In this document: one piece after another, positions 4,836 to 59,267 of the stretch | How positions within the stretch are numbered: position 1 is the stretch's first letter | Layout: each line of letters starts with the position of its first letter | Virus record (IMG/VR): IMGVR_UViG_3300023179_000009 | Coordinates: 372,001-436,000 of that record | Direction: 5' to 3' (one strand) | DNA length: 64,000 nt | Notes under the pieces: generated by a model | Databases searched by the model: none | Seen by the model: only the letters and a program-made list of their open reading frames with translations | What the model was told of the DNA's origin: nothing | Made by a program: the position numbers and the translations under genes

Positions 4836-5918
4836 ATGAAAAATAAAATTTTGATATTTTTTTCTTTTGTTTTATTATCTCTTCAATTATTTTTATATTT
4901 TGTTGAGATCAAGAACCCCGCTCCAAAGCCAGATGTAAAACCAATTCCTCAAGAACAAAAGTCTCTTCCTCAAATAGAAACAAACATTTCTAACCCATTC
5001 CCAGGATACCTGGATTATGACAAAATAGTTTTATTGTTAAAAGAATGGAATTCACAATCCGAAGACATCACAGAGTTTGGGGTTTATGGAAAAAGCACTA
5101 AAAATCAAGATTTAGTATATTTGAGATTGAGAAATAAAAGAATCAGTCAATCAGCGCAGTTGCCGGTGCTTGTTACAGCATGTATTCACGGAAATGAACC
5201 ATTATCAACTGCAACTATGATGTGGTATTTTGGAAATATTTTAAAAAATTATAAAAATAATTATGAAAAATTATTAGAAACAAGAGATATTTATTTTGTT
5301 CCTGTGGTGTCTCCTGATAGTTATCCTCATAGCCGATATGTCGATGGGGTTGATCCCAATAGAAATTTCCCCGGATTAAACAACTCTGATAAGCAATCTG
5401 TTAAGCCAATTGCCTCCATTCAAGACTTGTTTTTAAAAATTAAACCAAGAGCAGTACTGTCAGGGCATACTTGGGGTAGGGTTTTTTTAATACCTTACGG
5501 CGATCAAATGCAAAAATGTCCTGATCATGATCAATTTATGGGTATAGTATCGGAGATGGGTAGGTTGTCAAACTATAGATACATAAGAGCTTGTGATTTG
5601 TATATGGCAAGTGGGCGATTAAACAATCCCCCCATAAGAACTTATGGAGAACCTAAAGGAGAATACAAAACTTTAATGCCAATTTATGGAACAGAGGTGG
5701 ATTGGTACTATCGCAATGATTCTTTTGCTGTCGTGATGGAATTTGGCACACATCAAAGAAAACCAACCTTAGAAGAAATAAAATTTGAATACAATAGAAC
5801 TAATGATGCTTTTTTGTATTTTTTAGAAAAAGCACCCACAACTAAACTTGATCCTAGTCGTCTACCAGTTCAAGCCTTGAAACCAAAAAATATCGATGAA
5901 ACATTTAGAGACGAATAA
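4836..5918 (+). CDS. M14 zinc carboxypeptidase with N-terminal membrane anchor or signal
   Basis: IHGNE (HxxE), DPNRNFP, SGHTWG third ligand, VMEFG catalytic Glu; basic then hydrophobic N-terminus. Confidence 0.88.
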   Translation: MKNKILIFFSFVLLSLQLFLYFVEIKNPAPKPDVKPIPQEQKSLPQIETNISNPFPGYLDYDKIVLLLKEWNSQSEDITEFGVYGKSTKNQDLVYLRLRNKRISQSAQLPVLVTACIHGNEPLSTATMMWYFGNILKNYKNNYEKLLETRDIYFVPVVSPDSYPHSRYVDGVDPNRNFPGLNNSDKQSVKPIASIQDLFLKIKPRAVLSGHTWGRVFLIPYGDQMQKCPDHDQFMGIVSEMGRLSNYRYIRACDLYMASGRLNNPPIRTYGEPKGEYKTLMPIYGTEVDWYYRNDSFAVVMEFGTHQRKPTLEEIKFEYNRTNDAFLYFLEKAPTTKLDPSRLPVQALKPKNIDETFRDE

Positions 5919-6769
5919 TGCAATTTTCTTTTAAAAAACCTTTTTTAAAAGTTATAATAACAGATTTGAAAGAAAGTGGTTTGTATTTTCAAAAAAGAAT
6001 TGATTTTCTTTTAAGTGTTTTAAAAGAAAAATATTTTATAAAAATACAGCATTCGAGCGAATATCAAGGCGTTCATTTGGCCCAATGTATTGTTTTTGAA
6101 CACGAAAGCAAGCGTTTTAAAGCAATAGATCTAAGTGACCCAGATGATGGAGATTATGCTGGTTTTTTTGAAATTATCAAAAATGAAAATTGTCAATTTG
6201 TTTTAAAGTCTCAATATAATCCAGATTTAAATATTCCAAAATTAAAACCTTTTTTTTATTTTGAAAAAAGCGATCCCGAGTTATTCAGTAGTAGATTATC
6301 TTTTTTAAGATCTATAAAAAAAAATAATAATCAACTTTATTGGCGTGGATCGTTGCGTGAAAACCGTAAGAATATAATATTCTCCATTAAAGATTTATTA
6401 AACACTAGTTTTCAAAAATCAATACATTCAAAACTTTATTTCGAAGAACTTGCCTCGCACAAAATCGCTCTATCTTTACCGGGAGGCGGCAATAGTTGCC
6501 ACAGGGAATTTGAGTGTTTTGGAATAGGAACGGTTGTGTTGAGTCCAAAATTTAAAAACATTTATCACATACCATTAATTCCCGATTATCATTATTTAAG
6601 TGTGGAAGGTGATGAAGAAAAAGATATAATAAAAAATATAAAATACCGATTTGAAAATTTAAAAGATGACGAAATTAATTTTATCAGAAAGAACGCTATG
6701 GAGTACTACGACAATTATATTGAATACAAAAAAAACGTTTATTGGATGAGGCACTGTCTGGAGTTGTAA
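5918..6769 (+). CDS. putative glycosyltransferase (GT-B, GT90/exostosin-like C-terminus)
   Basis: LYWRGS...R, YFEELASHKIALSLPGGG..CHREFECFGIG, LIPDYHY, IRKNAMEYY. Confidence 0.65.
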   Translation: MQFSFKKPFLKVIITDLKESGLYFQKRIDFLLSVLKEKYFIKIQHSSEYQGVHLAQCIVFEHESKRFKAIDLSDPDDGDYAGFFEIIKNENCQFVLKSQYNPDLNIPKLKPFFYFEKSDPELFSSRLSFLRSIKKNNNQLYWRGSLRENRKNIIFSIKDLLNTSFQKSIHSKLYFEELASHKIALSLPGGGNSCHREFECFGIGTVVLSPKFKNIYHIPLIPDYHYLSVEGDEEKDIIKNIKYRFENLKDDEINFIRKNAMEYYDNYIEYKKNVYWMRHCLEL

Positions 6770-6771
6770 AT

Positions 6772-8262
6772 TTACTTTTTTGACATAAAGCGAATTTGAT
6801 TTTGAAATGAATCAAGTTCTAATTGCTTTTTTCTTTCATCTGCTAGTGTTGAATCGACGTTATTTGTAAATGGATCATAAATGTCTAAGAAATCATCGGA
6901 AACTTCACTTTCTCCATCTTTATAAACAAATATTTTTATTCTTGGTTGTCTTGTGTAATTTAAAAAAGCATCCACCAGATCTGGCTCTACTTTACCTATT
7001 TTTACGACAAAATCTTTTAGTTTTCTTGGAGGTAATCCGGCTGTCACGAATCCGTTTGTTAAACTTGACAACTCATCTGCCTCAATTGAGCCACTTAAGC
7101 CCAAAGACTTAATCAAAAAGACTATCTTGTTAAGGTCTTTTTGATCTATTTCTAAATCCATCAATGATTTTGGATCGTTCATTCTCAAAAGATAAGCCAA
7201 AGCCATTTGCTTGTCGCCTAACTCGGATATTTCTTTGGGAAAATTTGCATCGAGTATTTTGTTCGGAAAAACATGGTTTAAAATTCCCAAGTCATTACAT
7301 GTGGAAAGATATTTTCTTGAGTCAACTTCTTCTTTGTCCATTCCTTTTTTAAATTCATCCATCATGTATTTTCTATCCAACCCTCTCAATTTTTCACTTA
7401 ATTTTTTAACTTTTTGTTTCTCTTCATCAGAGACCTTGGAGGCATCGCCATACAAAGTTAGCATCCTAGCGTATCTCAGTATCCTTGAAGGATCTTCTTC
7501 TAATTTTTTCTCTATGTCTCCAATAGAATTTATTTTTCCGGCTGCTAAGTGATGCATGCCGCCAAAAAAATCATACAAATCTTTATTGGGTCCATTGTCA
7601 TTATTCAAAAGAACATACATTCCGTTTATTGTAAAATCTCTCCCTGCTGCATCATCTTTTTGAGTGCCCAACTCAGGGTCTTTGTCGATGAGACCCTTGG
7701 GGGTTTTTGTGAAAACTTCTAAGGTGTATTCATCGTCATTTACTTTAATACCAAAGACAAAAGGACGACCATTCTTATTCTCCCTCTGTACCCAAAAGTA
7801 TTGGTTGTTTCCCTTTTTAATATTTGGGCTATCTTTTAAAGTTTTTAAATCTCCCAATTTATTAAAAAAACTAAAACCATTTTGTTTAAGTAGGTGGTAA
7901 ACCTCGTCAGGCGAAGCACTTGTTGCTAACTCTACATTTCTAGGTTTTTTATTAAGTAGATGATCACGCACAGATCCGCCGGTTAAAAATAATTTTTTAC
8001 TAGTTATCTTAACAGGTTTTTCTCCACCTGTGTTTTCGTCTCTAGACCAACCCCAATTTGCACCTTGCTTAAAAGCTCTAACGATGGGTGCTAAATTTTT
8101 GTTTTTACCATAGTTCTCTGACTTTGGATCGTCCGATATTACAAAAGGAGAAAATTCATTTCCATCTCCTAAAGAAACCTTTGACCCAACGGGTTTTGAA
8201 GACTCTATATTTTCTTGTTGTGATTCTTTTAAAATTTTAAATTCAACAAAAGATTTTTTCAT
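6772..8262 (-). CDS. CCA-adding/poly(A) polymerase class II nucleotidyltransferase homologue with altered catalytic site
   Basis: LTGGSVRD, DAAGRDFTINGM, DFFGG and EEDPSRILR motifs are present; the usual DxD position reads N-V-E. Confidence 0.85.
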   Translation of the reverse strand: MKKSFVEFKILKESQQENIESSKPVGSKVSLGDGNEFSPFVISDDPKSENYGKNKNLAPIVRAFKQGANWGWSRDENTGGEKPVKITSKKLFLTGGSVRDHLLNKKPRNVELATSASPDEVYHLLKQNGFSFFNKLGDLKTLKDSPNIKKGNNQYFWVQRENKNGRPFVFGIKVNDDEYTLEVFTKTPKGLIDKDPELGTQKDDAAGRDFTINGMYVLLNNDNGPNKDLYDFFGGMHHLAAGKINSIGDIEKKLEEDPSRILRYARMLTLYGDASKVSDEEKQKVKKLSEKLRGLDRKYMMDEFKKGMDKEEVDSRKYLSTCNDLGILNHVFPNKILDANFPKEISELGDKQMALAYLLRMNDPKSLMDLEIDQKDLNKIVFLIKSLGLSGSIEADELSSLTNGFVTAGLPPRKLKDFVVKIGKVEPDLVDAFLNYTRQPRIKIFVYKDGESEVSDDFLDIYDPFTNNVDSTLADERKKQLELDSFQNQIRFMSKK

Positions 8263-8310: not shown

Positions 8311-8691
8311 TTACAGCGGGGGTGCAAGATTTAATTTTGTCAATACATAAGCCGCCAAAATAACCCAAACTATTTGAATTAAAAAATTTGCAATATTTTT
8401 CCAATTTTCATTATGGACTCCTTGGTTCGCTTCGACTTTAGAAATTTGAGACTCTAATTCTTTTATTTTTTTTTCTAATAGATCATTTTGTTGAATGAAT
8501 GTTTCTAAATTATATATTTTATTAAAAATCTCAACAATCTTATGATTATGGTAATCTATTTTTTCTTCTAGCTTTTTTTGTTTATCATTGATTATTTTTT
8601 CACGTTCATCTATTCTGTTGGTTAAGTCAAAAAGTTTTTGAACACTTTCGCTTAATTGCGATATTAATTGGAAACTTGTATCTTCTGCCAT
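8311..8691 (-). CDS. coiled-coil protein with C-terminal transmembrane helix (holin/XhlA-like architecture)
   Basis: heptad-rich body followed by IANFLIQIVWVILAAYVL. Confidence 0.55.
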   Translation of the reverse strand: MAEDTSFQLISQLSESVQKLFDLTNRIDEREKIINDKQKKLEEKIDYHNHKIVEIFNKIYNLETFIQQNDLLEKKIKELESQISKVEANQGVHNENWKNIANFLIQIVWVILAAYVLTKLNLAPPL

Positions 8692-11749: not shown

Positions 11750-14700
11750 GTGGCGACAGACCTGTATGGTCGGAGTATAGGAGACAACGTATCGGTTAAT
11801 CAAGTTAACCAGCAATTACTTTCACCGACCCAAGAAACAAAAAGACCAGACGCTCAAGAAGTTAATAACGATCCTGATAAAAAGGAATCGGCGTTAGAAA
11901 ATCTGTACGAAGCCATTAATCGTGTTGCTGAAAAAATAGACTCAAATGCATCAAAAGATTTAGAAGAATCAAAAAATTGGTCCAAAAATATAATTGATTT
12001 TCATAAAGATTTTAGAAACACAAGCAGATCCGACGAGTCTGGTCAAAAAACACAAACTGGGTTTTTGGATCTGGCTTCTAAAGCAATTCAAAATTTATGG
12101 GTGGCTTCTCAATCTCAAAATACAATCTGGGTTGGTATAAGCAAATTATCTAACAACGCCGTCCAAGAAATATCAAAATCTTTTAGTATGTCTGATTGTT
12201 GTGAAGCCTTGGGAGAAGCAACAGCCACTGTGCGAGGTTTGGATAATTTAAATTCAGGTGTGTCTGAAGCCTCAAAAACTGTTTTGTCTGAAGCTGGGGG
12301 CGGGGGGAGAGGAACAAATTGGGGAGGGGGTGATGACGACAGCGATGATGGTGGTGACGGTGGCTCAAGAAGAAGAGGCGATTCTTCTGACGCCTCTGAT
12401 TTTGAACTTCCTGATGCTGGGGACATGACTGGTGTGATAGCAAGAATGTCAACCATAACTGGCTTGATAAGTTTGGCGGCTAATAGTTTTGTTGATCTTC
12501 ACAGGAGTGTGATTAAAGCTCTTGATATAGACCCAATTCAAAAAATATTTGACGGCCAAATTCTTGAACATAATAATTTTCGTGAAAGTATTCGTGCTTT
12601 AATTCATGAGCAAGAAGGTTTTGGCGCAAGTAATAGACAGATAGAAAAAACATTTATAAATTTGGAATCATCAATAAACGCTGCCGGTGTTGGATCTGCT
12701 AAATTTAAAACAATGTATCTTAAAAATCTTGAACGTGGGTTAAGCTTGGCCACCGCTGAAGATAACAGGTACGTGGATGCTTTATCTGCACAAAAGAAAG
12801 GATTCACAATAGAACAAAAAGAAAGTGCATTGAGAGAAAGAAAAGTCAATAGATTAAAGAGCATACAAACCACTGCGTTGTCAACGGCTTCGTCGCTTCA
12901 CATGAGTTCAGATGCGATGAATGAACTTTTTATGAATTGGCACATGAATCTTGGTTTATCAGAGCAAAGTTTGGCTGAAATTGGCTCTCATATGAAAAAT
13001 GTTTCCAGATCAACAGGGGTTACTGGAAGTCAGTTGGAGAAAGCGATGATAAGTGCCGATGGTGTGATGAAAAATTTAAAGAAAGCTGGCATGGTGAGTA
13101 CTGATACTGCAAAAAGAGTAACCGAATTTATGGCCGCTGCTCAAAAACATGGGTTTGAAGGTGCGGCTGAATTGATGAATGTTTTAGGTGGAGGAGAAAC
13201 TTTTCATGATTCTAAATATAAACTTTTTTTGGGTAATGCGGCTAGATTTTCAGATAAACCAGAACAAGGTGTCCGAGATCTTGTACTTGGGAACACAATG
13301 AACCGATCTGGGGGTATGGAAAATCTTTTCGGGGGGGCTGAGCGGTTTGTTAGATCCCAGTTGTCTGGATTTGAAACAGCTTTAAATAGCGTTGGATTAA
13401 AATCTTCAACACTAGATGTTACAAATTTAAGTGAAGTTATGAATAAATTGCGAGCCGGTGGCAAACTTGAAGAAGCAGAAGCTTTAAAGAGAAGGTTCAA
13501 AGGTTTGGGAATAGAAATAGGAGAAGTTGAACGTGCTTTAAAAACAATGCAAGAAGAAACTTTGTCCTCATCAAAAAGGATTGACAAATATAGTAAAGAA
13601 TTAGAAAGTATGAAGGCTCAGGGCTTAGAAAAAACAGATGCTTATAAGCAGATTCAGAAAAAATTACTAGAGGCTCAAACAGGCCAGAGTCAGGATGTTT
13701 TTGGCAGAATAAAAAGCGTAATGGACAACAAAGAAGGTAAAACCGGGGGACAATTAGAGAAAGAATTAAAAGATTCACTAATACAAGTTTTGGGCGATGA
13801 AAAAGCAGCAGCAGAGTGGCAATCCAACCTTCCTGCAAAAGCCTCTGAGGCTGTGTCTCAAATGAGAGAAAGAGCAAAAGCTGAGGGTTTAAATTTTGAT
13901 GATATGCTAAAAGAAAAAGGAATCACAGGGGGAGAATCTCAGTTAACAAAAGGTTTACTAGAGGGTGATGCCTTATCTAATCAAGCCATGACTGAAATAA
14001 TGCAACGAATTAGTAAAAAAGAAAAACAAGGCGAGGATCCGATAACGGATATTAAAGGAATTTTAGAAGAAATACACACAACGCTTGCTCAAAAATTAGA
14101 CAATGTGGGCTTTGGATTGTCGGATATGATTGTTAAAATTTTATATGTAGCTGGTTATTTGGGCGGGATACTAATGACTGTGGCGAGTGGGATCTTAGCC
14201 TTAAGAATGCTACAAAATATTCCAGGGCTGCTCTCTGGTATTTCTGGTGTCTTCGGAGGTTTAAACAAGGCTTTAGGCAACCCTCTTGAAAAAATATTTG
14301 GAAAGGGTGGCAAAGGCCCACTTGGTGGATTGCTAGGAGACTGCTTGCCGGTTTGCCCGCCAAGCGGTGGTGGCGGTCAAATGATGCCAAGAAGACCAAC
14401 AGGAGGATCGCCAGTTGTACCGCCATCTCCAACAACGGGACCGATGACCACTGTGAGTCCATCTGGAAGACCAAAAAATACTACGGTTTTACCCGGAGGG
14501 CCTGATTATGGCGGCGGAGGTTGGGCTGGCGCTCAGGGGACACAATATCAATCGCCAACTGTTAGAGATGCGGCCACGGGCCAAGTTACAAGAAGAGACA
14601 TGAGTCGATCAGATCGTCGTGCCAATGCAGAGCGTTATCTAGATGCCAGAAGGGCCGCTGGCCAGTCGGGTCGAGGCTTTGGGCCAAGAGCAGGTAGTGG

Positions 14701-25141: not shown

Positions 25142-25143
25142 TT

Positions 25144-42862: not shown

Positions 42863-43626
42863 TTGGAATTTACGCAATAAAAAATAAATTTAATAACAAA
42901 CTTTATATCGGACAGAGCGTGTCGATTAAATGTAGATGGATGAATCACAGATCAGATTTGGCCACGGGTAGGCATCCAAATAAACATTTGCTAAAATCTT
43001 ATAAGAAATATGGAGAAGATTGTTTTGAATTTTTGATTTTAGAAAATTGTTTAAAAAGAGATTTGGGGAAAAAAGAAGAAGAGTGGATAAAAAAATTTCC
43101 TAAAAAACAACTATACAATATAAACTATAACATTGTAGATTTAAATGGAGAAAAAAATCCTTTTTTTGGTAAAAAGCACAAAAAAGAATCCAAAAAGAAA
43201 ATGTCAATTTGGAAAAAACAAAATTATATAGGTGCTAAAAATCCTAATTTTGGCAAAAAATGGACAAAAGAACAAAAAACCAAAAATGTTTTAAAAAATT
43301 CAAACACCAAATTAAAAAAAACTGATGTTCTGGAAATTAAAAAATTATTAATAGATGGCAAATTAGAAGATAAAGAAATTGCTAAAAAATTTAAAATTGG
43401 AAGATCCGTGGTAACAAGAATTTCTAACGGAACAAGGTGGTCCCATGTAACAGGGGGAAGAGTAATAAAAAAAGAAAGGAGAGGTTTAAGGAACATAGGT
43501 GTTAAGAGGTCAGAGAAAACAAAACAAAAAATCAGAAATTCTATTTTGGGCATCAAAAGATCTGAAGAAACAAAACGCAAAATAAGTTTATCTAAACAAA
43601 AAAAGAAGGAGAAAAAATGTCAATAG
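42859..43626 (+). mobile_element. free-standing GIY-YIG homing endonuclease with NUMOD3 repeats
   Basis: GIYAIKN..YIGQS..RW..H, NPFFGKKH and RSEETKRKIS repeats; overlaps both neighbours. Confidence 0.92.
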
Positions 43627-50734: not shown

Positions 50735-51571
50735 ATGGATATAAATCACCTGTCAGTTAGTAGAAAAAAGACATTCGATCAGTGTTCGCAGTTATACAAA
50801 TTCAAATATCATCTCAAAACACCTTCGCCGCAACCAGAGCCTTTTTACTTTGTGTATGGAAATTTGGTTCACAAAATAGCGGAGTTGTATGTTGCCGAAA
50901 AGGGGTCTAAAGCAATAGACAAAATAGCCTTAGATGTGCTGCATGGAAAAATCGAATTAAAAGAGGGCAAAAAATGTCCCAAATTGCCAAAAGAATATCA
51001 AAATAAAATAGGCAAAGACATAAAGGCAATTAAAAATTTAACAAAAAAAATAGGATTTGATGGTTATGTTGAATATGATTTTACTTACGATTTGGACCCG
51101 CCAAACAAAAAAAATGTTATAGGTTTTATAGACCGATTGATAATAAAGGAAGATTCAAAACAAAAAAAAGCTTTTATAATTGATTATAAGACAACCAAAA
51201 AAGGAAAACATCGACTTAACAACGAAACTGTTTTATATGACTTACAACTTAGATGTTACTGTAGAGTGGTTCAAAAAATATTTGACATACCAGCGTCGAA
51301 TATAAAGGCGGCACTTTTTTATTTAGATGGAGAAAATTTGATCGCTGCCCAATACAACCAAGACTCACTAGATAGGGTTGAAAAAGAATTAAAAAATGGA
51401 TATGTGACTATTGAAGAAACAAAATCAGAAACAGTTCGTGGTAGTGTTGGGTGGCACTGCAAAAACTGTGAGTATTCGAGCATTTGTCAATTTTATAAAT
51501 CCCAAAATCAATCAAATGAATCTTGGAATGGGGATTTGTTGGAATTGGGACACGATAATTCTTGGAATTAA
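50735..51571 (+). CDS. PD-(D/E)XK exonuclease (Cas4/RecB/AddB-like) with 4-Cys Fe-S staple
   Basis: LSVS...FDQC, GNLVH, GFIDRL, IIDYKT, QLRCY, CKNCEYSSIC. Confidence 0.88.
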   Translation: MDINHLSVSRKKTFDQCSQLYKFKYHLKTPSPQPEPFYFVYGNLVHKIAELYVAEKGSKAIDKIALDVLHGKIELKEGKKCPKLPKEYQNKIGKDIKAIKNLTKKIGFDGYVEYDFTYDLDPPNKKNVIGFIDRLIIKEDSKQKKAFIIDYKTTKKGKHRLNNETVLYDLQLRCYCRVVQKIFDIPASNIKAALFYLDGENLIAAQYNQDSLDRVEKELKNGYVTIEETKSETVRGSVGWHCKNCEYSSICQFYKSQNQSNESWNGDLLELGHDNSWN

Positions 51572-52461
51572 TTTTTGGGTAAAGGAATATAGTCTTCTGG
51601 GTAAATGCCCTGCGGATTATTTCTATCTATAATAGGTAATTTTCTTGCCCAACTAGATCCAATTTCGTTTAGCCACCCAAATCCTTGTTGTTCGTTGATT
51701 TCTCTTAACACTTTTAATGGTGTAAACAAACCATTCCCGTTTCCTTGTATGTCAGTTGTCCCCCAGCATATTCCAACAAAAAAATCTTCTGACATTAAAC
51801 CGCCACCGGATCTTCCTGGTCTTGGGCTATTCTCTGTTGTTACTATATCTGGCCCTCTTTCGCCTAGATAACGAACATCGTAGTGGGCAACTTCTCTACC
51901 ACCATCGCAACCAAGAGAATGCAATCTCACGTTTGTGTTAAAGTTAAAATCTGGTGGGGATATTGGAAAGTAGTTTGGAACCCAATCTGGTTTAAATTTT
52001 ACTAAACTACAATCTCTGCCTCTATCATTAAAATAAAAAAGAACTTCGGCTTTGTATGATTTTGGTTTATCTAATTTAGTTTCATTGTGATACCAAGTTA
52101 TTACGTCGCAATTTAATTTTTTTTTGGCACCATCTTCGGCATTCATGTTCCCAGACCACAGGTGACCGCAAGATTGAACATAAGCATAATTTTCCTTTGT
52201 GTCATAAAAAATTATAGTTCCAGAGCCGGATGCGTTTTTGACCGATATTTTTATACTTACACATAACCATTTTTTAAATTTTTCATCTCTTTGATCTATC
52301 GGAACTCCGCCAATTGCCAAATGTGCATATGGGTCATCCCCAACAATTGGCATTGGCTCCACTGGCTTGGTTATTTTATTTTTTTCTAAATATTTAGTGA
52401 AAAATAGAAAAACCAAAGAGCTAAAAATTAAAAATAAAAAAAATAAAATTTTTTTAGTCAT
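51568..52461 (-). CDS. trypsin-like (S1) serine protease with N-terminal membrane anchor
   Basis: GSGTII, SCGH (His), RDCSL (Asp), PGRSGGGL (Ser); hydrophobic N-terminus. Confidence 0.85.
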   Translation of the reverse strand: MTKKILFFLFLIFSSLVFLFFTKYLEKNKITKPVEPMPIVGDDPYAHLAIGGVPIDQRDEKFKKWLCVSIKISVKNASGSGTIIFYDTKENYAYVQSCGHLWSGNMNAEDGAKKKLNCDVITWYHNETKLDKPKSYKAEVLFYFNDRGRDCSLVKFKPDWVPNYFPISPPDFNFNTNVRLHSLGCDGGREVAHYDVRYLGERGPDIVTTENSPRPGRSGGGLMSEDFFVGICWGTTDIQGNGNGLFTPLKVLREINEQQGFGWLNEIGSSWARKLPIIDRNNPQGIYPEDYIPLPKN

Positions 52462-52484: not shown

Positions 52485-52907
52485 ATGCTTAAACTAACAA
52501 TTAATCACAATATTTATGTTTCGAGAGAACAATCTTATCTCCTTCATCAAGGAAAAGAAGTAACAACAATAGGTGCTAGTGTCCCTGTGTGGTTTTATAA
52601 TAAAGTTTCTTCTGAGCCTGCGATAGAAGTTTTTTGTAAATATTATATAAAAAACCCTAAAAAAGAAGTGCCCATAAAAATTTTAGAGGATGGTTACGAA
52701 ATAAACTTGCCTTTTCAAGAAAAGTCTATTGATGGTAAAGAAATTTCTTCAAAAAGTCTTCTGGATATATGCGACGGAGGATCTGAGTTTTTGAATTACA
52801 GAGAACTAAACAAAGTTTTAGTAAAAGATAAAACTTTGAGTATTATGCATTATATAACAATAAATAGACTAGAAAAAATAGAAGAAACTTTTAATCAAGG
52901 TTTTTAA
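52485..52907 (+). CDS. hypothetical protein
   Basis: 140 aa; ACTATATTA box 4 nt upstream. Confidence 0.65.
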   Translation: MLKLTINHNIYVSREQSYLLHQGKEVTTIGASVPVWFYNKVSSEPAIEVFCKYYIKNPKKEVPIKILEDGYEINLPFQEKSIDGKEISSKSLLDICDGGSEFLNYRELNKVLVKDKTLSIMHYITINRLEKIEETFNQGF

Positions 52908-52932
52908 CTAATTTCTTTTAAGGCTTAGCATT

Positions 52933-53454
52933 TCATGGGCAATCACGTATTTGCATGCCAATTCTCAAAGTAACCGAATCGCCCACATTAAGCGATATCA
53001 CATCAGACAATACAGCAGTTGATATGAGCCTGTAGGTGTTTTGAACCTCTGCCGCTAAAAATAAATTGGATACCGGTCCCCAAGATCCTGCCGTGGATCT
53101 AAAGGCAACTATTGGGCTTGTTGCAACATAATGATCTTGAATAAAATTAATTGCAAAATCTCCCGAAGAGGATAATTCTGCTCTTTGATAACCTCCACCA
53201 AAAGGCTCTCCTATTAAATCATTCATCACATCATCTACATTGACTTGCTGTCTTCTGTCTAGTCCCAAATAATAGAAATTTGGAATAATAGTACTGTTTT
53301 TTCCACCCACAAAAGCCGCCTGTAAGAGAAATTGCTCTCCTTCTTGGTGTAAAATGTTTTTAATATTTTTTTCTTCCCAAAGAATATTTCCAAGATAATC
53401 CCTGTGTTGGATTTCTTGTATCTTCATTATTCCAGGCCAATTTTTGTTTTTCAT
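52933..53454 (-). CDS. putative tail/baseplate structural protein, distant paralog of 29811..30284
   Basis: KNILHQEGEQFLL, YLGL, GGYQR, WGPVSNLFL, LNVGDSVTL pattern. Confidence 0.55.
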   Translation of the reverse strand: MKNKNWPGIMKIQEIQHRDYLGNILWEEKNIKNILHQEGEQFLLQAAFVGGKNSTIIPNFYYLGLDRRQQVNVDDVMNDLIGEPFGGGYQRAELSSSGDFAINFIQDHYVATSPIVAFRSTAGSWGPVSNLFLAAEVQNTYRLISTAVLSDVISLNVGDSVTLRIGMQIRDCP

Positions 53455-53709: not shown

Positions 53710-54216
<507 letters not shown>

Positions 54217-54364: not shown

Positions 54365-54679
54365 TTAAAAATAAATTTTATGTCTTAAAAAACAATCTTT
54401 TTTAAGATTGTTTTTGTTGATGGGACATATCTTTTTCTCAACAACTTGCACTTGTTTTCCAAATTGATCTTGTTTAAAAGTAACTATTGTTTGCAATTTA
54501 CCATATTTTTTTTGCCACAAATCTAAAGGAGAATCACCTAAGGCCAAAGATGGACTATTGCAGTTTGATTTTTGCTGGCAACAGCCGCAACCGCTATTGT
54601 TCTCGGGCTTTTTTCTTCTTTGATATTCTAGGGAAGATTTGCCGGGACTATAGTCAAAACAAGACATTTTTAACCTCAA
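54365..54679 (-). CDS. small basic Cys-containing hypothetical protein
   Basis: 104 aa, CGCCQQKSNC; coupled to the protease gene. Confidence 0.55.
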   Translation of the reverse strand: MRLKMSCFDYSPGKSSLEYQRRKKPENNSGCGCCQQKSNCNSPSLALGDSPLDLWQKKYGKLQTIVTFKQDQFGKQVQVVEKKICPINKNNLKKDCFLRHKIYF

Positions 54680-56121
54680 GAAATAAATTTTCTTTGTAAT
54701 TTTCCATTTACAATTTCAAAGGGAGCGTTTGCATTTTGGGAAACTTGATTTGTTTCTTTTAAATAGTTTAAAGCATCCATTGCACCCACTATGTCCTCTT
54801 CTTCGGTTGTTGATAGGGAGTCGTAAATATTATTGTTTAGATCATAAAGATAAATTTTTTCGTTTGGAATTTCTACTTCAACATCGTAAAGAAAATTTTG
54901 TTCGGATTGTGAGGAAATTATATAATCTTTTAATTTTATACTCAGGAGATTCGATTTTTTAACAAAAAATTCGTTATTTTCACATTTTGGAGCCGAAAGC
55001 ATTTTCACTTGTGTTGTTAATAAATTTCTTTTCTTAAAAATTTCTTGTATTTTATCTTGATATTTTCCATCCCCCAAGATCATGTCAGCCCACAGTATTG
55101 TTTTTGCTACTGATTGGTAAAATTTAGAGTTTAAAGGAGCGTGTTGCATTGCTTTTAAAACATATTTTAAAGAAATGTCTCTTGATTGTTTTAAAGACTC
55201 CAAACAATCTAAGGAATTTCTTTTGTCTTCGTATATCAAAACTATTAAATCATAAAAAGCACCCAAAAAGATACGACCAAAACTGTGGCACTCAGCCGCA
55301 ATATTATCATCTGTGTTCTCTGCTGGTAAAGAATTTGGATTAACATACTTAAAGTCATTTATTGCAGATCTTAAACAATCTTTATTTCTTCCGGAGTTGG
55401 GCTTCGACAACTTATAAACCGCTTGTCCAAATTGTTCGGCCAAATTTGATATTATGTTTGGCTTTTTCATGTCGCCATTCGTTTGATTAATCGCATATTC
55501 TAATATTTCTTGATGACTCATTATGTTTACAATCGCTATAAAATCAGCGAATGCTTCGTGCATTGACATTATTTCTAAAGACATGGCACTCCAAGTCTCT
55601 GGTCTATAGGCGTCAAGTATTGCGTGTCCTAATTCATGTGCCACAATATCGCTTGAATCGCAAGCAAATAAGGATCCGCCTATTTGTGGATTATTAATAT
55701 AAAAAAATCTCAAGGATTTACGGTCATAGTAAGCATTTAAGTCAACGCCAGCTCTTGGAAAAACTTGTAAAGAAGAAGCCCCAGGCCAGTTTGGTATTTT
55801 TTTATTTGTTTGAGAATTTACAACGTTTAGAGTATTTGAAATTGTAATATAGCAATTTGCTGCTTGTCCTTCCGCCGATATTCTATTATACCCGCCACCT
55901 TTGTATCCTATAATGTTAAAAAATGGAGCATTAGTTTGTTGAGGAGGTATAATTTTTTTTGTTAAAAGTGGAGTAGATGGGTCACTAATCAGGTAGTCTA
56001 CTGGTTTACTATTCGAAACATTTTCTTTTTTAATTATTTTTGTCTCAACCCTGCTTCTTAATATAGAAGAAAAATGTTTTTTAAGGTTAAAATAATTAAT
56101 AAATTTTTCAAATAAATACAT
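54676..56121 (-). CDS. M4/M36 (thermolysin/fungalysin-like) zinc metalloprotease
   Basis: NAYYD, DIVAHELGH, HEAFAD (third ligand), ECHSFG. Confidence 0.88.
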   Translation of the reverse strand: MYLFEKFINYFNLKKHFSSILRSRVETKIIKKENVSNSKPVDYLISDPSTPLLTKKIIPPQQTNAPFFNIIGYKGGGYNRISAEGQAANCYITISNTLNVVNSQTNKKIPNWPGASSLQVFPRAGVDLNAYYDRKSLRFFYINNPQIGGSLFACDSSDIVAHELGHAILDAYRPETWSAMSLEIMSMHEAFADFIAIVNIMSHQEILEYAINQTNGDMKKPNIISNLAEQFGQAVYKLSKPNSGRNKDCLRSAINDFKYVNPNSLPAENTDDNIAAECHSFGRIFLGAFYDLIVLIYEDKRNSLDCLESLKQSRDISLKYVLKAMQHAPLNSKFYQSVAKTILWADMILGDGKYQDKIQEIFKKRNLLTTQVKMLSAPKCENNEFFVKKSNLLSIKLKDYIISSQSEQNFLYDVEVEIPNEKIYLYDLNNNIYDSLSTTEEEDIVGAMDALNYLKETNQVSQNANAPFEIVNGKLQRKFIS

Positions 56122-56166: not shown

Positions 56167-56739
56167 ATGGCGAATCATAAAGAAAACATAATACGTGAAA
56201 AAAGAACGCTTGAAGCAACAAAAAAAAATTTTATGGGGCCATCGGGTAAATTTGGAGTTATCTTGCAAGTTTTTGGAACCCCTGTCGTGAGACAAGGCTC
56301 TGGCTTGTATGAATCAAATTTACTGGAAGATTGCAATAAAATAGATAATGACCATAGCTATGAGTCAACAGCAAGCGGACAGGCTGGGCCATTGATTGAC
56401 AAAGGCGAAATTGGAAATTTAGATTTTGATTTTATTCAAAATGAGGGAGTCTTATTTGATGGATTAAGTAAAGGCGTGCATTTAGAAATTATTTATTGGC
56501 AATCTAGCAATCAATTAAAAGTCTCTTATAAAGGTCGTCTAGTTTATCTAGAAATAGCTGGCGAACTGGAGGGATACGTTCCTTTTGATGAATGGGAAAA
56601 TATAATTAACCGTTTATTTGAAATTTCTAAAAATAAATTAAAAGATAAAAATCTAATTAAAGAAAAAGAACAAAAAGAAACTATAAATAAAAATAAACTT
56701 AAATTTCTGGAAAATATTAAAAATAGATGGGGTATCTAA
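56167..56739 (+). CDS. hypothetical protein
   Basis: 190-aa ORF. Confidence 0.7.
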   Translation: MANHKENIIREKRTLEATKKNFMGPSGKFGVILQVFGTPVVRQGSGLYESNLLEDCNKIDNDHSYESTASGQAGPLIDKGEIGNLDFDFIQNEGVLFDGLSKGVHLEIIYWQSSNQLKVSYKGRLVYLEIAGELEGYVPFDEWENIINRLFEISKNKLKDKNLIKEKEQKETINKNKLKFLENIKNRWGI

Positions 56740-56790
56740 ATATTTAAAATTAAAATCATAAATAAGTTAAACCAAAAGGTAAGGTGAAAA

Positions 56791-57216
56791 ATGTCCGACA
56801 ACAATTCAGAGGATGTAAAAATTGAAGAATTTCAACTAGAGGATGGAAGGCGTGCTGAGAAGCATGTTGTTATAGATGAAAAGGGCGTTGAAGTTGAAGA
56901 GGTTTTTGCAGAGCAAAAACCTGTTCTGAAAATTGAAAAAAGAATTATTCGTGAATCAAAAAATATAGTAGTCAAAGAAATTCATCAAACTTTAAAGGAT
57001 GGAAACGTTGTTGATGAAAATGTTTTTGAAATTAGTCCAGAAGCTTTCAGTTTGACTAAAAAAGAAAAAGTCACAAAAAGTGTTGTAAAGGCTGTTGATT
57101 TAATTGAAGAAAAAGTTGAAAACAAGAATAAAACCAATAATATTGTAAATATTGTATTAGTATCATTGATAGTTTTACAAATTGTATTTTTATTGGGCTA
57201 TTTGCTTTGGAACTAA
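56791..57216 (+). CDS. hypothetical protein with C-terminal transmembrane helix
   Basis: AAGGTG RBS; IVNIVLVSLIVLQIVFLLGYLLW. Confidence 0.7.
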   Translation: MSDNNSEDVKIEEFQLEDGRRAEKHVVIDEKGVEVEEVFAEQKPVLKIEKRIIRESKNIVVKEIHQTLKDGNVVDENVFEISPEAFSLTKKEKVTKSVVKAVDLIEEKVENKNKTNNIVNIVLVSLIVLQIVFLLGYLLWN

Positions 57217-57222
57217 AAACAA

Positions 57223-57254
57223 AAAAAGCAAGCCTTTTTAGGGGCTTGCTTTTT
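57223..57254. terminator. bidirectional intrinsic terminator
   Basis: AAAAAGCAAGCC-ttttta gg-GGCTTGCTTTTT hairpin between convergent genes. Confidence 0.8.
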
Positions 57255-57277
57255 GTTTTCAACAACGAACAAGTTGT

Positions 57278-57604: not shown

Positions 57605-57656
57605 TGAAATCCCTTTTGTTAGTGTTAATGTCCACACGCTTTTGGCGATAAATCAT

Positions 57657-57685
57657 TTTATATTAAAAAATAAATTATTTGTCAA
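57657..57685 (-). promoter_or_regulatory. putative sigma70-type promoter
   Basis: minus strand TTGACA-17 nt-TATAAA(AT). Confidence 0.5.
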
Positions 57686-58134
57686 ACGCATTTTTCTTTA
57701 AGATATGGAAGTATGAATTGGTTAAGTTCCAATGCTGTTTTTTGGCTATCCTGCAATTGATCTTCGTAGAATAAGTGAACGTAAGATTCGTGAGCGTTAC
57801 CCGAATCAGTTGACGTTTCTCGTAATCTCACAGCATACAAGTTTGATACTTCTTGCTCCATTTCTTGAGCATATTTTAAAATTTCAAAAGGACAGGTCAG
57901 GTCTATGGGGAACGGGTTTGCTTCTTGTTGTGGGATGCCGCCTAATTGCACTATAAGACGAGCAAATTCCTCCACGTGCTTGTGTTCTTCAAATGATTCT
58001 TTAATCAAAAACTCAGAGAGTTCCTCTCTGTGGAGACCTTGGATCATTGTGCCTGCTTGCAGGTAAAAAAGCATATGCTTTCTTTCATTTTTTAAATCAT
58101 TTTGAAGCATCAAGATTAAATCGTCATTTTTCAT
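57682..58134 (-). CDS. ferritin/bacterioferritin-like protein
   Basis: LKNE....FY, ESFEEHKH, IVQLGGIP, EMEQEV..LY four-helix bundle pattern. Confidence 0.8.
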   Translation of the reverse strand: MKNDDLILMLQNDLKNERKHMLFYLQAGTMIQGLHREELSEFLIKESFEEHKHVEEFARLIVQLGGIPQQEANPFPIDLTCPFEILKYAQEMEQEVSNLYAVRLRETSTDSGNAHESYVHLFYEDQLQDSQKTALELNQFILPYLKEKCV

Positions 58135-59267
58135 TTTTGTTCCTTGTGATAATGATGATTGAATGGCATCTCTGGGTTGCCGTGATCATGATTGTAATCC
58201 ATTTGTTTAAATTTAGCAAAATTAAATTCGGGGGCAGATTTTGAATTGATAATATTTAAGCCCAACTCAAAAGCATATTTTGTAATTTGTTCTAACCCCT
58301 CATAATTAATTTTATCTGGTGTGTCGTCGGGGGTGTGATAATTAGAGTGAAGACCTGTGTGTAAAAAAGCTATTGGTATTTTTTTGTTGTAAAAAGAAGC
58401 ATGATCTGATCCCCCCGAGGTTCTTCCTGTAATTTTTTTTGCAAATTTGTATTTTTGATTTAAATCATTAATTATTCTACTGACATCGAAGGAACTATCA
58501 CCTTCTGAAAATCCAGCAAAATAATGCCCTTTATCCAAATAACCAACCATGTCTAAATTGATCATAAAAACATGTTTTTTTATATCGGGTTTTTCTTCTG
58601 GGAATAAAGGATTTTCACAATAGTGACGACTGCCAATCAGACCCATCTCTTCTGCTGAGTAGGCTTGAAAAACAACCGTTCTTTTAAGATCTTCTTTTAT
58701 TAAAGAAAACGCTTTTGCCAATTCTATCAAAGCCACTGTTCCAGATGCGTTATCGTCGGCACCTGGATGAACTTCTCTTCTATTTGGGGTTCTACTCATT
58801 GATGGCCCATAACCTATATGGTCCATGTGAGCGCCGATCACTACAATTTCATCCTTAACATTTTTGTCATTTCCTTTTATTATTGCATAAATGTTTTGGG
58901 TAAAGTCATCGCCCGATTCATTTTTTGGTCCGAAATTTGTTTTTCTTATAGAAAATTTTTGATAAAAAGTTTTTAATCCAAAACTTTCAAATTTCTTTTT
59001 TATGAACTCTGCGGCCATTATATTGCCTTTTTTGCCGCTCATTCTTCCTTCTAGTTCATTACTAGATAAATAATCTAAGTCTTGTTTAAGATTTTTTGAT
59101 GAAATTCCAGATATCGCTTGTTCAATTGTGTTTTTTGGTGTGTTATCTATTTTTTCAACTTTTGGTTCATTTGGTTTTATTGGTTTTTCTTTTTTATATT
59201 CAATCAATAGTATTGATACAAAGATGATTGTTGTTACGCAAAATAATATTGGTATTAATTTTTTCAT
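58131..59267 (-). CDS. M28 family aminopeptidase with N-terminal membrane anchor
   Basis: GAHMDH, GADDNASG, AEEMGLIGS, NLDMVG, SDHASF, YHTPDD. Confidence 0.92.
   Translation of the reverse strand: MKKLIPILFCVTTIIFVSILLIEYKKEKPIKPNEPKVEKIDNTPKNTIEQAISGISSKNLKQDLDYLSSNELEGRMSGKKGNIMAAEFIKKKFESFGLKTFYQKFSIRKTNFGPKNESGDDFTQNIYAIIKGNDKNVKDEIVVIGAHMDHIGYGPSMSRTPNRREVHPGADDNASGTVALIELAKAFSLIKEDLKRTVVFQAYSAEEMGLIGSRHYCENPLFPEEKPDIKKHVFMINLDMVGYLDKGHYFAGFSEGDSSFDVSRIINDLNQKYKFAKKITGRTSGGSDHASFYNKKIPIAFLHTGLHSNYHTPDDTPDKINYEGLEQITKYAFELGLNIINSKSAPEFNFAKFKQMDYNHDHGNPEMPFNHHYHKEQK

What the first reader, a model, noticed from the sequence alone, without database searches (positions are those of the whole stretch)
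4836..59267. Four mechanistically different proteases, three on a shared membrane-anchor plus Lys/Pro stalk
Seen: M14 carboxypeptidase (4836..5918), S1 trypsin-like (51568..52461), M4/M36 (54676..56121) and M28 aminopeptidase (58131..59267) all keep their catalytic motifs. Three begin with a basic MK/MTKK start, a ~20-aa hydrophobic helix and a K/P linker (KNPAPKPDVKP, KITKPVEP, KPIKPNEP). No lysozyme, amidase or transglycosylase was recognised in the window, including in the spike. Inference: the phage exports a complete endo-, amino- and carboxy-peptidase set to the host envelope. This could serve protease-based lysis or remodelling of a protein-rich wall or S-layer, receptor destruction for superinfection exclusion, or peptide scavenging. 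It is a strong candidate for an undescribed system.
Basis: partly seen in the sequence, partly recalled or inferred. Interest (0 to 1): 0.75.

Follow-up and report, generated by a model that had tools for sequence, protein, structure and literature searches.

The report
Megaphage membrane-tethered periplasmic protease trio
A 459-kb freshwater megaphage and its uncultivated relatives carry three conserved protein-cutting enzymes, each predicted to sit on a proline-rich stalk outside the host's inner membrane, plus a fourth thermolysin-like enzyme that is not exported; their target is unknown, and no ordinary cell-wall-degrading lysis enzyme was found in the genome.

Summary
All four genes encode peptidases whose catalytic residues are invariant across 20-39 aligned homologues:
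- an M14A-type carboxypeptidase;
- an M28 aminopeptidase;
- a chymotrypsin-fold serine protease closest to DegS/HtrA but without a PDZ domain;
- an M4/M36 thermolysin-like zincin.

The first three share a basic start, a strongly hydrophobic N-terminal helix and a Pro/Lys-rich linker. This architecture is kept across the whole clade and is special to these three proteins in the genome. The zincin has no anchor.

The window lies in a 458,813-bp lake-water phage with T4-type morphogenesis genes. The genes are not sporadic: hundreds of homologues at 45-70% identity sit on phage contigs of up to 693 kb. The serine protease, zincin and M28 lie in a conserved block beside the large terminase. All four records that are at least 90% complete hold the trio. 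M28 and M14 are nevertheless missing together in some sublineages.

Sixteen peptidoglycan-hydrolase Pfam families gave no credible hit in the genome.

My best reading (confidence 0.35) is a periplasmic proteolytic cascade that reduces envelope proteins or peptides to amino acids. Protease-assisted lysis remains open. The function is inferred and untested.

The parts
4836..5918 (+). M14A-type zinc carboxypeptidase, 360 aa. Residues 1-24 are a basic start plus hydrophobic helix (4836-4907). Residues about 25-55 are the Pro/Lys-rich stalk. The catalytic domain spans about residues 60-340.
   Evidence: Pfam PF00246, E 2e-22. Invariant H118, E121, R176, H211, E302, with the anchor and a variable Pro-rich linker in all 39 aligned homologues. 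The family profile is nearest carboxypeptidase T/A/B in the PDB.
51568..52461 (-). DegS/HtrA-like (PA clan, S1) serine endoprotease without a PDZ domain, 297 aa. The N-terminal anchor is residues 1-22 (52396-52461), followed by a short K/P linker and then the protease domain at about residues 58-263.
51571..51660 (-). Conserved C-terminal tail of the serine protease (residues about 268-297, consensus IPIIDRNNPQGxYPxDYIPLP), set after a low-confidence linker. It behaves as a portable module.
   Evidence: Nearly invariant in 35 homologues. pLDDT is below 50 at residues 271-276. The same tail ends a different anchored 310-aa protein in related records. In this genome only the protease carries it.
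54676..56121 (-). M4/M36 (thermolysin/fungalysin-fold) zinc endopeptidase, 481 aa, with no N-terminal hydrophobic segment. It is not predicted to be exported.
   Evidence: Pfam M36, 28.2 bits against a cut-off of 23.3. Invariant HExxH plus E189/D193. AF2 pLDDT 90.7. Foldseek top hits are M36 and M4 structures. None of 117 homologues has an N-terminal helix.
56167..56739 (+). Unknown 190-aa protein (g190), the conserved divergent neighbour of the zincin.
   Evidence: Adjacent and on the opposite strand in 41 of 41 loci that hold both, usually 30-70 bp apart. No Pfam or PHROG hit. The complex prediction gave no answer.
58131..59267 (-). M28 di-zinc aminopeptidase, 378 aa. The anchor is residues 1-23 (59199-59267), followed by a K/P/E stalk and then the catalytic domain at about residues 125-333.
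   Evidence: Pfam PF04389, E 5e-43. PDB aminopeptidases match at E 2e-20. Invariant metal and catalytic residues. The anchor and Pro-rich linker are present in 22 of 22 homologues.
57682..58134 (-). Ferritin-like 150-aa protein. It overlaps the 3' end of the M28 gene by 4 bp, is co-oriented with it, and has no signal.
   Evidence: Pfam Ferritin, E 2e-11. Adjacent and co-oriented with M28 in 29 of 29 loci holding both. It stays next to terminase where M28 is absent.
52485..53454 (.). Two unknown conserved genes next to the serine protease: g140 on the + strand (52485-52907) and g173 on the - strand (52933-53454).
   Evidence: Found in 71 and 69 of 75 related loci in the same order. No family hit.
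59317..61143 (+). T4-type large terminase. It serves as the context marker of the conserved core block.
   Evidence: Pfam Terminase_6N and Terminase_6C. Present in 55 of 75 loci.

Best explanation
Three of the four enzymes form a conserved set of type-II (N-in, C-out) proteins tethered to the inner membrane. Each catalytic domain is held in the periplasm or envelope space on a proline-rich stalk. The PDZ-less DegS/HtrA-like serine endoprotease would cut envelope or periplasmic proteins, or imported oligopeptides, into fragments. The M28 aminopeptidase and the M14A carboxypeptidase would trim those fragments from both ends to free amino acids at the membrane surface, where the host's transporters could take them up. 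The likely benefit is recycling of envelope proteins and peptides, and envelope proteostasis, during the long and costly replication of a 459-kb phage.

The thermolysin-like zincin is a separate, non-exported enzyme, either cytoplasmic or virion-associated. It is paired with the unknown gene g190.

Shown: the enzyme families, intact active sites, the shared anchor-plus-stalk architecture, and conservation. Inferred: topology, substrates and purpose.
For: - Architecture is shared by the three enzymes, kept across the clade and special to them in this genome. A short, positively charged N-flank precedes a helix with a hydropathy score of 2.4-2.9.
- The endoprotease fold is nearest DegS, itself an inner-membrane-anchored periplasmic protease, and DegP/DegQ.
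- The M14 profile is nearest the peptide carboxypeptidases T/A/B.
- M28 is nearest secreted bacterial leucyl aminopeptidases.
- M14 and M28 are present or absent together in 6 of 7 records that are at least 60% complete. This fits two exopeptidases working as a pair.
- All four records at least 90% complete hold all three enzymes.
- The three are the only recognisable hydrolases among the genome's predicted exported proteins.
- The S1-like, zincin and M28 genes lie on the strand of the primase, opposite the baseplate and terminase genes. By analogy with T4 this hints at non-late expression; the inference is weak.
- A separate S77 prohead protease covers head maturation.
- Related marine megaphages have been reported to carry peptidase genes listed as auxiliary metabolic genes (PMC9723777).
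Against: - There is no experimental or transcript evidence. RNA-library contigs held only about 200-nt pieces of relatives.
- The host is unknown. The only host evidence is indirect: lipobox-like signal sequences, by my reading of N-termini listed, suggest a bacterium.
- Topology was not run through a dedicated predictor.
- The phage encodes no transporter or any protein with four or more predicted membrane-spanning segments.
- The proteins are old, highly conserved phage genes rather than recent host acquisitions. Median identity is 49% for the S1-like protease and 60% for M28, against 51% for terminase. The S1-like family is essentially virus-only. This is not typical of auxiliary metabolic genes.
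- The conserved C-terminal docking-like tail of the endoprotease suggests a specific partner or target rather than bulk digestion.
- The lack of any detectable muralytic enzyme leaves a lysis role open.
Confidence: 0.35

Rival explanations
1. Protease-assisted lysis or egress. The tethered proteases attack protein components of the envelope (outer-membrane-to-wall tethers, wall-bound proteins, an S-layer, or peptide stems). They would replace or complement a muralytic endolysin.
For: - Sixteen peptidoglycan-hydrolase Pfam families gave no credible hit in this genome, which CheckV rates 91% complete.
- Twelve of them were also absent from the complete 572-kb relative G001.
- No muralytic gene lies near the small two-helix holin-like proteins.
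- The stalks could let the domains reach the wall.
- The endoprotease has a terminal docking-like tail, so with its N-terminal anchor it could bridge the periplasm as spanins do.
- There is precedent for a phage-derived secreted metalloprotease that sensitises cells to lysins (PMC8235301).
Against: - None of the three families is known to cut glycan strands.
- The M14 is M14A-like. No peptidoglycan-specific M14 appears among the structures matched.
- M28 needs a free alpha-amino terminus, which stem peptides lack (established knowledge).
- M14 and M28 are missing from sublineages.
- Uncleaved, strongly hydrophobic anchors are exported continuously with no holin-type timing.
- More than 70% of ORFs are unannotated, so a divergent muralytic enzyme may be hidden.
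- For three of the families the control genomes did not respond either.
Confidence: 0.2
2. Superinfection exclusion or counter-defence. The tethered proteases would destroy periplasmic parts of receptors, incoming phage proteins, or membrane-bound host defence sensors.
For: The location matches that of the T4 early exclusion proteins Imm and Sp, which act at the inner membrane and periplasm (established knowledge). The genes lie on the non-late strand. The conserved tail could target a specific partner.
Against: Exclusion genes are usually fast-evolving and patchy, whereas the S1-like protease is among the better-conserved genes. Two exopeptidases are not needed to inactivate a receptor. No target is known.
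Confidence: 0.12
3. DegS-like signalling. The PDZ-less anchored protease would constitutively cleave a host membrane regulator, for example an anti-sigma factor, to reprogramme envelope-stress transcription. The exopeptidases would be unrelated accessories.
Against: DegP, DegQ and HtrA score almost the same. This reading does not explain the shared architecture or the co-distribution of M14 and M28. No regulator target has been identified.
Confidence: 0.1
4. Virion maturation or virion-borne enzymes. The proteases would process phage structural proteins, or travel in the particle.
For: - Well-conserved peptidases of jumbo phages usually track virion modules (PMC7824862).
- The S1-like protease, zincin and M28 sit beside terminase.
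- The anchor-less zincin also lies next to terminase in a distant 595-kb phage that lacks the other three.
- For the zincin alone this reading is plausible, at roughly 0.3.
Against: A canonical gp21-type S77 prohead protease is present. Membrane anchors, Pro-rich stalks and secreted-type M14A and M28 domains do not fit cytoplasmic capsid processing. The neighbourhood is simply the conserved core of the genome, so synteny there is not specific.
Confidence: 0.05

Closest known systems
DegS / HtrA-family (S1C) periplasmic serine proteases
   Different: There is no PDZ domain. Instead it carries a conserved, family-specific 30-residue C-terminal tail that is shared with another anchored protein. 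Identity to solved structures is only 14-17%. The family is virus-only.
Carboxypeptidase T / A / B (M14A)
   Same: HxxE...H zinc site, the Asn-Arg substrate-carboxylate site and the catalytic Glu are all invariant. These are the best PDB sequence matches.
   Different: A membrane anchor and Pro-rich stalk replace a signal peptide and propeptide. It is encoded by a phage.
Secreted bacterial M28 leucyl aminopeptidases (Aeromonas/Vibrio AAP, Bacillus YwaD, Legionella LapA)
   Same: The co-catalytic di-zinc ligand set is invariant. Sequence matches to solved aminopeptidases reach E 2e-20. NCBIfam LapA matches at E 6e-24 but far below its cut-off.
   Different: It has an uncleaved anchor and stalk, and no PA domain or propeptide. 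It is encoded by a phage and is gained or lost as an insertion or deletion between the terminase and ferritin-like genes.
Thermolysin (M4) and fungalysin (M36)
   Same: HExxH plus a downstream Glu/Asp motif, and a two-lobed fold.
   Different: There is no signal peptide and no recognisable FTP/PepSY propeptide. It has an extra C-terminal alpha/beta domain. Only one BFVD viral structure resembles it.
Phage-derived secreted metzincin/TIMP-like pair of Listeria (PMC8235301)
   Same: A protease of phage origin that acts on the envelope and affects sensitivity to lysis.
   Different: Different protease families, a Gram-positive prophage remnant, and no membrane tether. That study tested function; nothing has been tested here.
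SAR endolysins and spanins (canonical lysis proteins anchored in the inner membrane)
   Same: An N-terminal membrane segment with the functional domain in the periplasm.
   Different: There is no muralytic domain. The helices are strongly hydrophobic (score 2.4-2.9) rather than Gly/Ala-rich and releasable. No outer-membrane lipoprotein partner has been identified.
TonB-type Pro-rich periplasmic spacers and type-II anchored brush-border peptidases (analogies from general knowledge)
   Same: An N-terminal anchor followed by a rigid Lys/Glu-Pro spacer that holds a domain away from the membrane. Endo-, amino- and carboxypeptidases displayed together on a membrane beside transporters.
   Different: There is no homology. 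The analogy is mechanistic only and was not tested.

Membership tests
Peptidase M14 (subfamily A-like) | HxxE...H zinc ligands, the Asn-Arg carboxylate-binding site, a catalytic Glu, and a Pfam score above the gathering cut-off | tested here: met
   80.5 bits against 21.6. H118, E121, R176, H211 and E302 are invariant in 39 sequences.
Peptidoglycan-specific M14 (MpaA/Csd4/endopeptidase I type) | Closer similarity to gamma-D-Glu-mDAP peptidases than to peptide carboxypeptidases | tested here: not met
   The profile search of the PDB returns 53 sequences at E up to 0.001, all named carboxypeptidase T/A/B/N/M/D/O-type or unnamed M14. None is a murein peptidase. Activity was not assayed.
Peptidase M28 | Co-catalytic di-zinc site (His, Asp, Glu, Asp, His) with a catalytic Glu, and a Pfam score above the cut-off | tested here: met
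   147.4 bits against 21.3. H147, D149, D172, E206, E207, D239 and H311 are invariant.
PA clan / S1 serine protease | Double beta-barrel chymotrypsin fold with a His-Asp-Ser triad in that order | tested here: met
   Triad invariant. Fold matches. The window protein itself is below the Trypsin_2 cut-off (17.4 against 27.6 bits), but 29 of 35 homologues hit at E up to 0.001.
HtrA/DegS family (S1C) | Protease domain followed by at least one PDZ domain | tested here: not met
   There is no PDZ hit in Pfam. Only about 35 residues follow the protease domain, and they form a non-PDZ tail. It works like an HtrA/DegS-type protease but is not a member.
Peptidase M4/M36 (thermolysin-like gluzincins) | HExxH plus a third-ligand Glu in an ExxxD motif, and the thermolysin fold | tested here: met
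   M36 scores 28.2 bits against 23.3. H162, E163, H166, E189 and D193 are invariant. Foldseek matches M36 and M4 at E 1e-5. Among 39 homologues, 11 hit M4 and 7 hit M36, so the subfamily is undecided.
Phage endolysin / virion-associated lysin | A peptidoglycan-cleaving domain (glycosidase, transglycosylase, amidase, or an M15/M23/CHAP/NlpC endopeptidase) | tested here: not met
   Sixteen Pfam families were searched six-frame over the genome with no credible hit. The weak hits proved spurious.
SAR (signal-anchor-release) lysis proteins | A weakly hydrophobic, Gly/Ala/Ser-rich N-terminal helix able to leave the membrane | tested here: not met
   The helices are rich in Phe, Leu and Ile, with mean hydropathy 2.4-2.9 over 19 residues. 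The releasability criterion comes from general knowledge.
Sec-dependent type-II signal anchor (export of the catalytic domain) | A positively charged short N-region, an uninterrupted hydrophobic helix, no signal-peptidase site, and an experimentally periplasmic domain | tested here: inconclusive
   The charge and hydrophobicity pattern fits. No small residues at -1/-3 are visible in the three window proteins. No SignalP/DeepTMHMM run and no experiment were available.
Auxiliary metabolic gene (host-derived) | Close cellular homologues indicating acquisition from hosts, with patchy distribution | tested here: inconclusive
   M14 and M28 are patchy. However, the nearest sequences are all phage-like metagenomic contigs. 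The S1-like family has only 5 hits among 185,579 species genomes.

The most novel reading that the evidence does not exclude
A whole clade of freshwater and marine megaphages has no muralytic endolysin. It leaves its host by means of inner-membrane-tethered proteases. The DegS-like enzyme, anchored at its N-terminus and docked by its conserved C-terminal tail to a wall or outer-membrane partner, would cut the protein links that hold the envelope together. This would be a protease-based lysis system not described for tailed phages.
Probability: 0.15. Interest if true: 0.9.

Novelty: new variant of a known kind. Interest (0 to 1): 0.6.

Why it matters
Phage-encoded peptidases are usually either capsid-maturation enzymes or sporadic auxiliary genes. 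This case is different. A matched endo-, amino- and carboxypeptidase trio is built on one shared membrane-anchor-plus-stalk design. It is conserved across a large, globally distributed clade of uncultivated megaphages, and the endoprotease family is virus-specific and carries a portable C-terminal docking-like tail.

If the trio feeds the phage by digesting the host's envelope proteins or imported peptides, it is a new kind of resource take-over, located in the periplasm. If it drives lysis, it would be a new exit route that does not depend on a muralytic enzyme. It would also explain why no endolysin can be found in these genomes.

Either way the work gives concrete, expressible targets (four soluble catalytic domains) for a phage group that has no cultured member.

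Tried and rejected
1. Nucleotide and protein searches of 50,697 GenBank phage records. There was no close relative. Only LR756511.1 (595 kb) shares the terminase (48% identity) and the zincin (34%), and it lacks the other three enzymes.
2. A T4-type late promoter, TATAAATA. One copy lies 20 nt upstream of the zincin start, but the motif is not enriched in the window: 9 found against 6 expected. No timing class could be assigned.
3. Weak Amidase_2 hits in two relatives. One lies in a radical-SAM-like ORF with a CxxxCxxC motif, the other in a small unrelated ORF. The weak NlpC/P60 hit falls inside the M28 region, is interrupted by a stop codon, and is below the cut-off. All were rejected.
4. Other exported proteins of the genome (10 scanned) and the neighbours of four small two-helix holin-like proteins (10 scanned). 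No muralytic or other hydrolase was found, only DUF2459, DUF5672, a NodB-type polysaccharide deacetylase and an AAA ATPase.
5. A lipoprotein with a second membrane helix at genome 136322-136825 was considered as a unimolecular spanin. It has no family hit and no lysis neighbours, so it was left open.
6. Complex prediction of the zincin with its divergent neighbour g190 scored 0.01. The tool's verdict was 'no answer', so it is evidence neither way.
7. Expression. Two metatranscriptome runs hold 160-200-nt contigs at 92-96% identity over the protease, g190 and the tail-anchored gene. These come from relatives and may be DNA carry-over, so the result is inconclusive.
8. Host inference. The five genome-collection hits lie in MAGs labelled Bacteriovoracaceae, Chloracidobacterium, archaeon, Neisseriaceae and Anaerolineales. 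One of these contigs is 546 kb, so they are most likely mis-binned phage contigs and give no host signal. Papers on related megaphages predict Bacteroidota hosts (PMC12619734), but this was not tested here.
9. Conservation of the M14 neighbourhood. It is not conserved, so the sugar-modifying genes next to M14 in this window are not part of the feature.
10. PHROGs and NCBIfam added nothing beyond Pfam for the four proteins.
11. Not used: the exhaustive representative-protein search and the metagenome contig scan.

Full report
**What the window is**

The 64-kb window is bases 372,001-436,000 of a single 458,813-bp contig with 35% G+C. IMG/VR classes it as a linear virus record, and CheckV rates it 91% complete. 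It uses the standard genetic code, with all three stop codons in use.

It carries the following recognisable genes:
- a T4-type large terminase at 59317-61143;
- gp25- and gp6-like baseplate wedge genes at 24713-26700;
- a Toprim primase and a PD-(D/E)XK nuclease;
- a canonical gp21-type S77 prohead protease, just beyond the window at genome 440573-441007.

The same DNA occurs in lake-water and freshwater metagenomes from several independent studies dated 2011 to 2025. No GenBank phage is close. Only LR756511.1, a 595-kb uncultured phage, shares the terminase at 48% identity. This is therefore an uncultivated freshwater megaphage with T4-like morphogenesis genes.

**Checking the observation: the enzymes**

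All four ORFs exist as described.

- **M14 (4836-5918).** It scores far above the Pfam cut-off. In an alignment of 39 homologues the zinc ligands H118/E121/H211, the carboxylate-binding N175-R176 and the catalytic E302 are invariant.
- **M28 (58131-59267).** It also scores far above the cut-off. The di-zinc set H147, D149, D172, E206-E207, D239 and H311 is invariant. Solved bacterial aminopeptidases match at E 2e-20.
- **Zincin (54676-56121).** It passes the M36 cut-off with 28.2 bits against 23.3. HExxH plus E189/D193 are invariant. It gives a confident model (pLDDT 90.7) whose best solved matches are fungalysins and thermolysin-family enzymes.

**Checking the observation: the shared N-terminus**

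M14, the serine protease and M28 each start with a short basic stretch. A 19-residue segment with mean hydropathy 2.4-2.9 follows, and then a Lys/Pro-rich stretch. This is not peculiar to this genome. The hydrophobic helix is present in 108 of 119 M14 homologues, 103 of 118 serine-protease homologues, 22 of 22 M28 homologues and 0 of 117 zincin homologues. The linker that follows holds 10-20% proline.

In this genome the proteome average is 3.6% proline. The three proteases rank 2nd to 4th for proline, and first to third for Pro plus Lys, among all 26 proteins with an N-terminal hydrophobic helix.

The N-flank is short and carries a net charge of +1 to +2. I see no small-residue cleavage site after the helix. 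The simplest reading is an uncleaved Sec-type signal anchor with the catalytic domain outside the cytoplasmic membrane. This is an inference, because no dedicated predictor was available.

**Are the genes sporadic?**

They are not. Searches of 5.8 billion proteins returned 733 relatives of the serine protease, 362 of the zincin and 456 of M14. The best 120 of each are 41-96% identical (mostly 45-70%) and lie on contigs of up to 693 kb. Many contig lengths recur in all three lists, for example 121781, 148274, 693098, 107792 and 86688.

In IMG/VR, 75 loci carry the serine protease. Comparing all window genes against them shows a conserved core block, in this order:

terminase, M28, ferritin-like, g119, a tail-anchored 141-aa protein, g190, zincin, ..., g173, g140, serine protease, PD-(D/E)XK nuclease, primase, ..., actin-like gene.

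Modules are inverted between sublineages. Median identities are 49% for the serine protease, 60% for M28 and 36% for the zincin, against 51% for terminase.

All four records that are at least 90% complete (G000, G001, G010, G011) hold M14, M28 and the serine protease; G011 has two copies of the protease. The serine-protease family is practically virus-only. There are five hits among 185,579 species genomes, all on MAG contigs of scattered taxonomy, one of them 546 kb long. The nearest ESM-Atlas clusters are viral.

**Limits of the 'system' idea**

The genes are not one cassette.
- M14 lies 46 kb from the others, and its neighbours are not conserved among 37 M14 loci.
- M28 behaves as an insertion or deletion. 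Where the terminase/ferritin junction is visible, M28 sits between the two genes in 24 loci and is absent in 15. When present it is always adjacent to and co-oriented with the ferritin-like gene (29 of 29).
- M14 and M28 are both missing from G002 (79% complete), G003, G005 and G009. Among records at least 60% complete, the two are concordant in 6 of 7. The numbers are small and the records are not phylogenetically independent.
- The zincin has a different signature. It has no anchor, it is always the divergent neighbour of the unknown gene g190 (41 of 41 loci), and it is the only one of the four present in the distant phage LR756511.1, again near terminase.

I therefore treat the feature as a trio of exported enzymes plus a separate non-exported zincin.

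**A new detail: the C-terminal tail**

The serine protease ends in a nearly invariant tail of about 30 residues (consensus IPIIDRNNPQGxYPxDYIPLP), set after a low-confidence linker. A profile search of related records found this tail alone at the end of other proteins.

One of these is a 310-aa protein that also has an N-terminal hydrophobic helix. Its middle domain carries His- and Cys-containing motifs and matches no Pfam family or PDB sequence. Its partial homologue in another record ends in the same tail. In this genome only the protease carries the tail.

The tail is thus a portable module on anchored envelope enzymes. It is a candidate docking peptide for a common partner.

**Is there a conventional lysis system?**

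I searched the whole genome in six frames with 16 Pfam families:
- Phage_lysozyme, SLT, Amidase_2, Amidase_3;
- Peptidase_M23, Peptidase_M15_4, Peptidase_M15_3, VanY;
- GH19, GH25, GH108, Glucosaminidase, Muramidase, Lysozyme_like;
- NlpC/P60 and CHAP.

None gave a credible hit. Twelve of them were also negative in the complete 572-kb relative G001, and several were negative in up to nine further records. The few weak hits were spurious.

There are three caveats. For GH19, GH108 and Muramidase the control genomes did not respond either. The genome is 91% complete. Most ORFs have no annotation.

Ten other predicted exported proteins, and the neighbours of four small two-helix proteins, contain no muralytic domain. 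The phage encodes no protein with four or more predicted membrane-spanning segments, and hence no transporter.

**What the enzymes most resemble**

- The M14 family profile is nearest carboxypeptidase T, followed by the A/B enzymes. No peptidoglycan-specific M14 appears among the structures matched.
- M28 resembles secreted leucyl aminopeptidases.
- The endoprotease resembles the periplasmic quality-control and stress proteases DegS, DegP and DegQ, but it lacks their PDZ domain.

These are general protein and peptide-degrading enzymes.

**Mechanism I commit to (confidence 0.35)**

The trio forms an inner-membrane-tethered, periplasm-facing proteolytic cascade. The DegS/HtrA-like enzyme fragments envelope proteins or imported oligopeptides. 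M28 and M14 then trim the fragments from both ends to amino acids at the membrane surface. This would serve recycling and proteostasis during production of a very large phage.

The enzyme identities, the architecture and the conservation are shown. The topology, the substrates and the benefit are inferred.

Points against this reading:
- The genes are old and highly conserved, which is unlike typical auxiliary genes.
- The tail suggests a specific partner.
- There are no expression data. Only about 200-nt pieces of relatives were found in RNA libraries.

**Rival explanations**

- **Protease-assisted lysis (0.2).** The failure to find any muralytic enzyme keeps this alive. The enzymes' substrate types, the dispensability of M14 and M28, and the non-releasable anchors weigh against it.
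- **Superinfection exclusion or counter-defence (0.12).**
- **DegS-like cleavage of a host regulator (0.1).**
- **Virion maturation (0.05 for the trio).** This is unlikely given the separate S77 protease. For the zincin alone it is plausible. The comparative study PMC7824862 notes that well-conserved jumbo-phage peptidases usually track virion modules.

**What is known**

I found no description of this trio. A paper on marine megaphages merely lists 'peptidase' among auxiliary genes (PMC9723777). A paper on a new aquatic jumbo-phage lineage lists a 'putative peptidase' core gene and predicts Bacteroidota hosts (PMC12619734). The closest functional precedent for an envelope-acting protease of phage origin is the Listeria metzincin/TIMP-like pair (PMC8235301).

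**Verdict**

The feature is a new variant of a known kind, namely phage-encoded peptidases. It has an unusual shared export architecture and clade-wide conservation, and its biological role is unresolved. Interest 0.6.

Noticed in passing
Genome coordinates about 265,400-358,800 (outside the window, which starts at 372,001): The motif (T/A)GATACCAACTAG occurs about 95 times, always on the + strand. It sits in nearly every intergenic gap of a 94-kb array of small + strand genes and begins with the upstream gene's stop codon. It is often followed by a perfect GC-rich hairpin. It looks like a repeated regulatory or RNA-processing element of an early-gene-like block.
   Followed up: partly
window 51571-51660 (-); L146:522-1454 (+); L147:1285-1797 (-): The 30-residue C-terminal tail of the serine protease also ends a different N-terminally anchored protein in related megaphages. 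That protein has His- and Cys-containing motifs (my guess: a clan-CD-like cysteine peptidase) and no Pfam or PDB match.
   Followed up: partly
window 43617-44630 (+): An actin-fold gene with weak MreB/MamK matches is the best-conserved gene of the region. Its median identity is 68% across 47 loci, higher than terminase.
   Followed up: partly
window 53710-54216 (-): A 168-aa protein made almost entirely of Asp/Glu runs, with interspersed Trp/Tyr. It could be a DNA mimic or a counter-ion protein. It lies between the zincin and g173.
   Followed up: no
window 11750-19867 (+): A giant 2705-aa ORF coincides with a jump in G+C to 0.446 and a GC skew of 0.26, against about 0.33 G+C elsewhere. It lies upstream of the baseplate genes and was not annotated here.
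   Followed up: no
window 2208-6769 (+): In this genome M14 is embedded among sugar-modifying genes. These are a GDP-mannose-4,6-dehydratase/epimerase-like gene (2208-3266), two paralogous unknown proteins sharing a VIPVDDDDWFHP motif (3267-4031 and 4028-4828), and another unknown gene (5918-6769). The neighbourhood is not conserved in relatives.
   Followed up: partly
window 8311-8691 (-) and 56791-57216 (+): Two small tail-anchored proteins, each with a soluble or coiled-coil N-terminal part and a single C-terminal membrane helix. The first has a weak, sub-threshold XhlA match; XhlA is a lysis-associated protein of the Bacillus PBSX element. The second has a weak EssA match. They are possible holin- or spanin-like candidates.
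   Followed up: no
Genome 440573-441007 (+), 4.6 kb past the window end: A canonical T4 gp21-type prohead protease (Pfam S77, E 9e-26). It is a fifth protease family in the neighbourhood and is also present in the complete relative G001.
   Followed up: yes
Genome 136322-136825 (-): A 167-aa protein with a lipobox (LSGC), a coiled-coil region, a second membrane helix and a 55-residue tail. It sits alone on the minus strand among plus-strand genes. Its topology resembles a unimolecular spanin, and it has no family hit.
   Followed up: partly
Genome 170006-170593 (+): A NodB-type polysaccharide deacetylase (Pfam E 3e-22) without a signal peptide. It is the only wall-polysaccharide-related enzyme noticed, and it is not a lytic enzyme.
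   Followed up: no
window 6772-8262 (-): A 496-aa protein with a poly(A) polymerase / CCA-adding head domain (Pfam E 3e-16).
   Followed up: no
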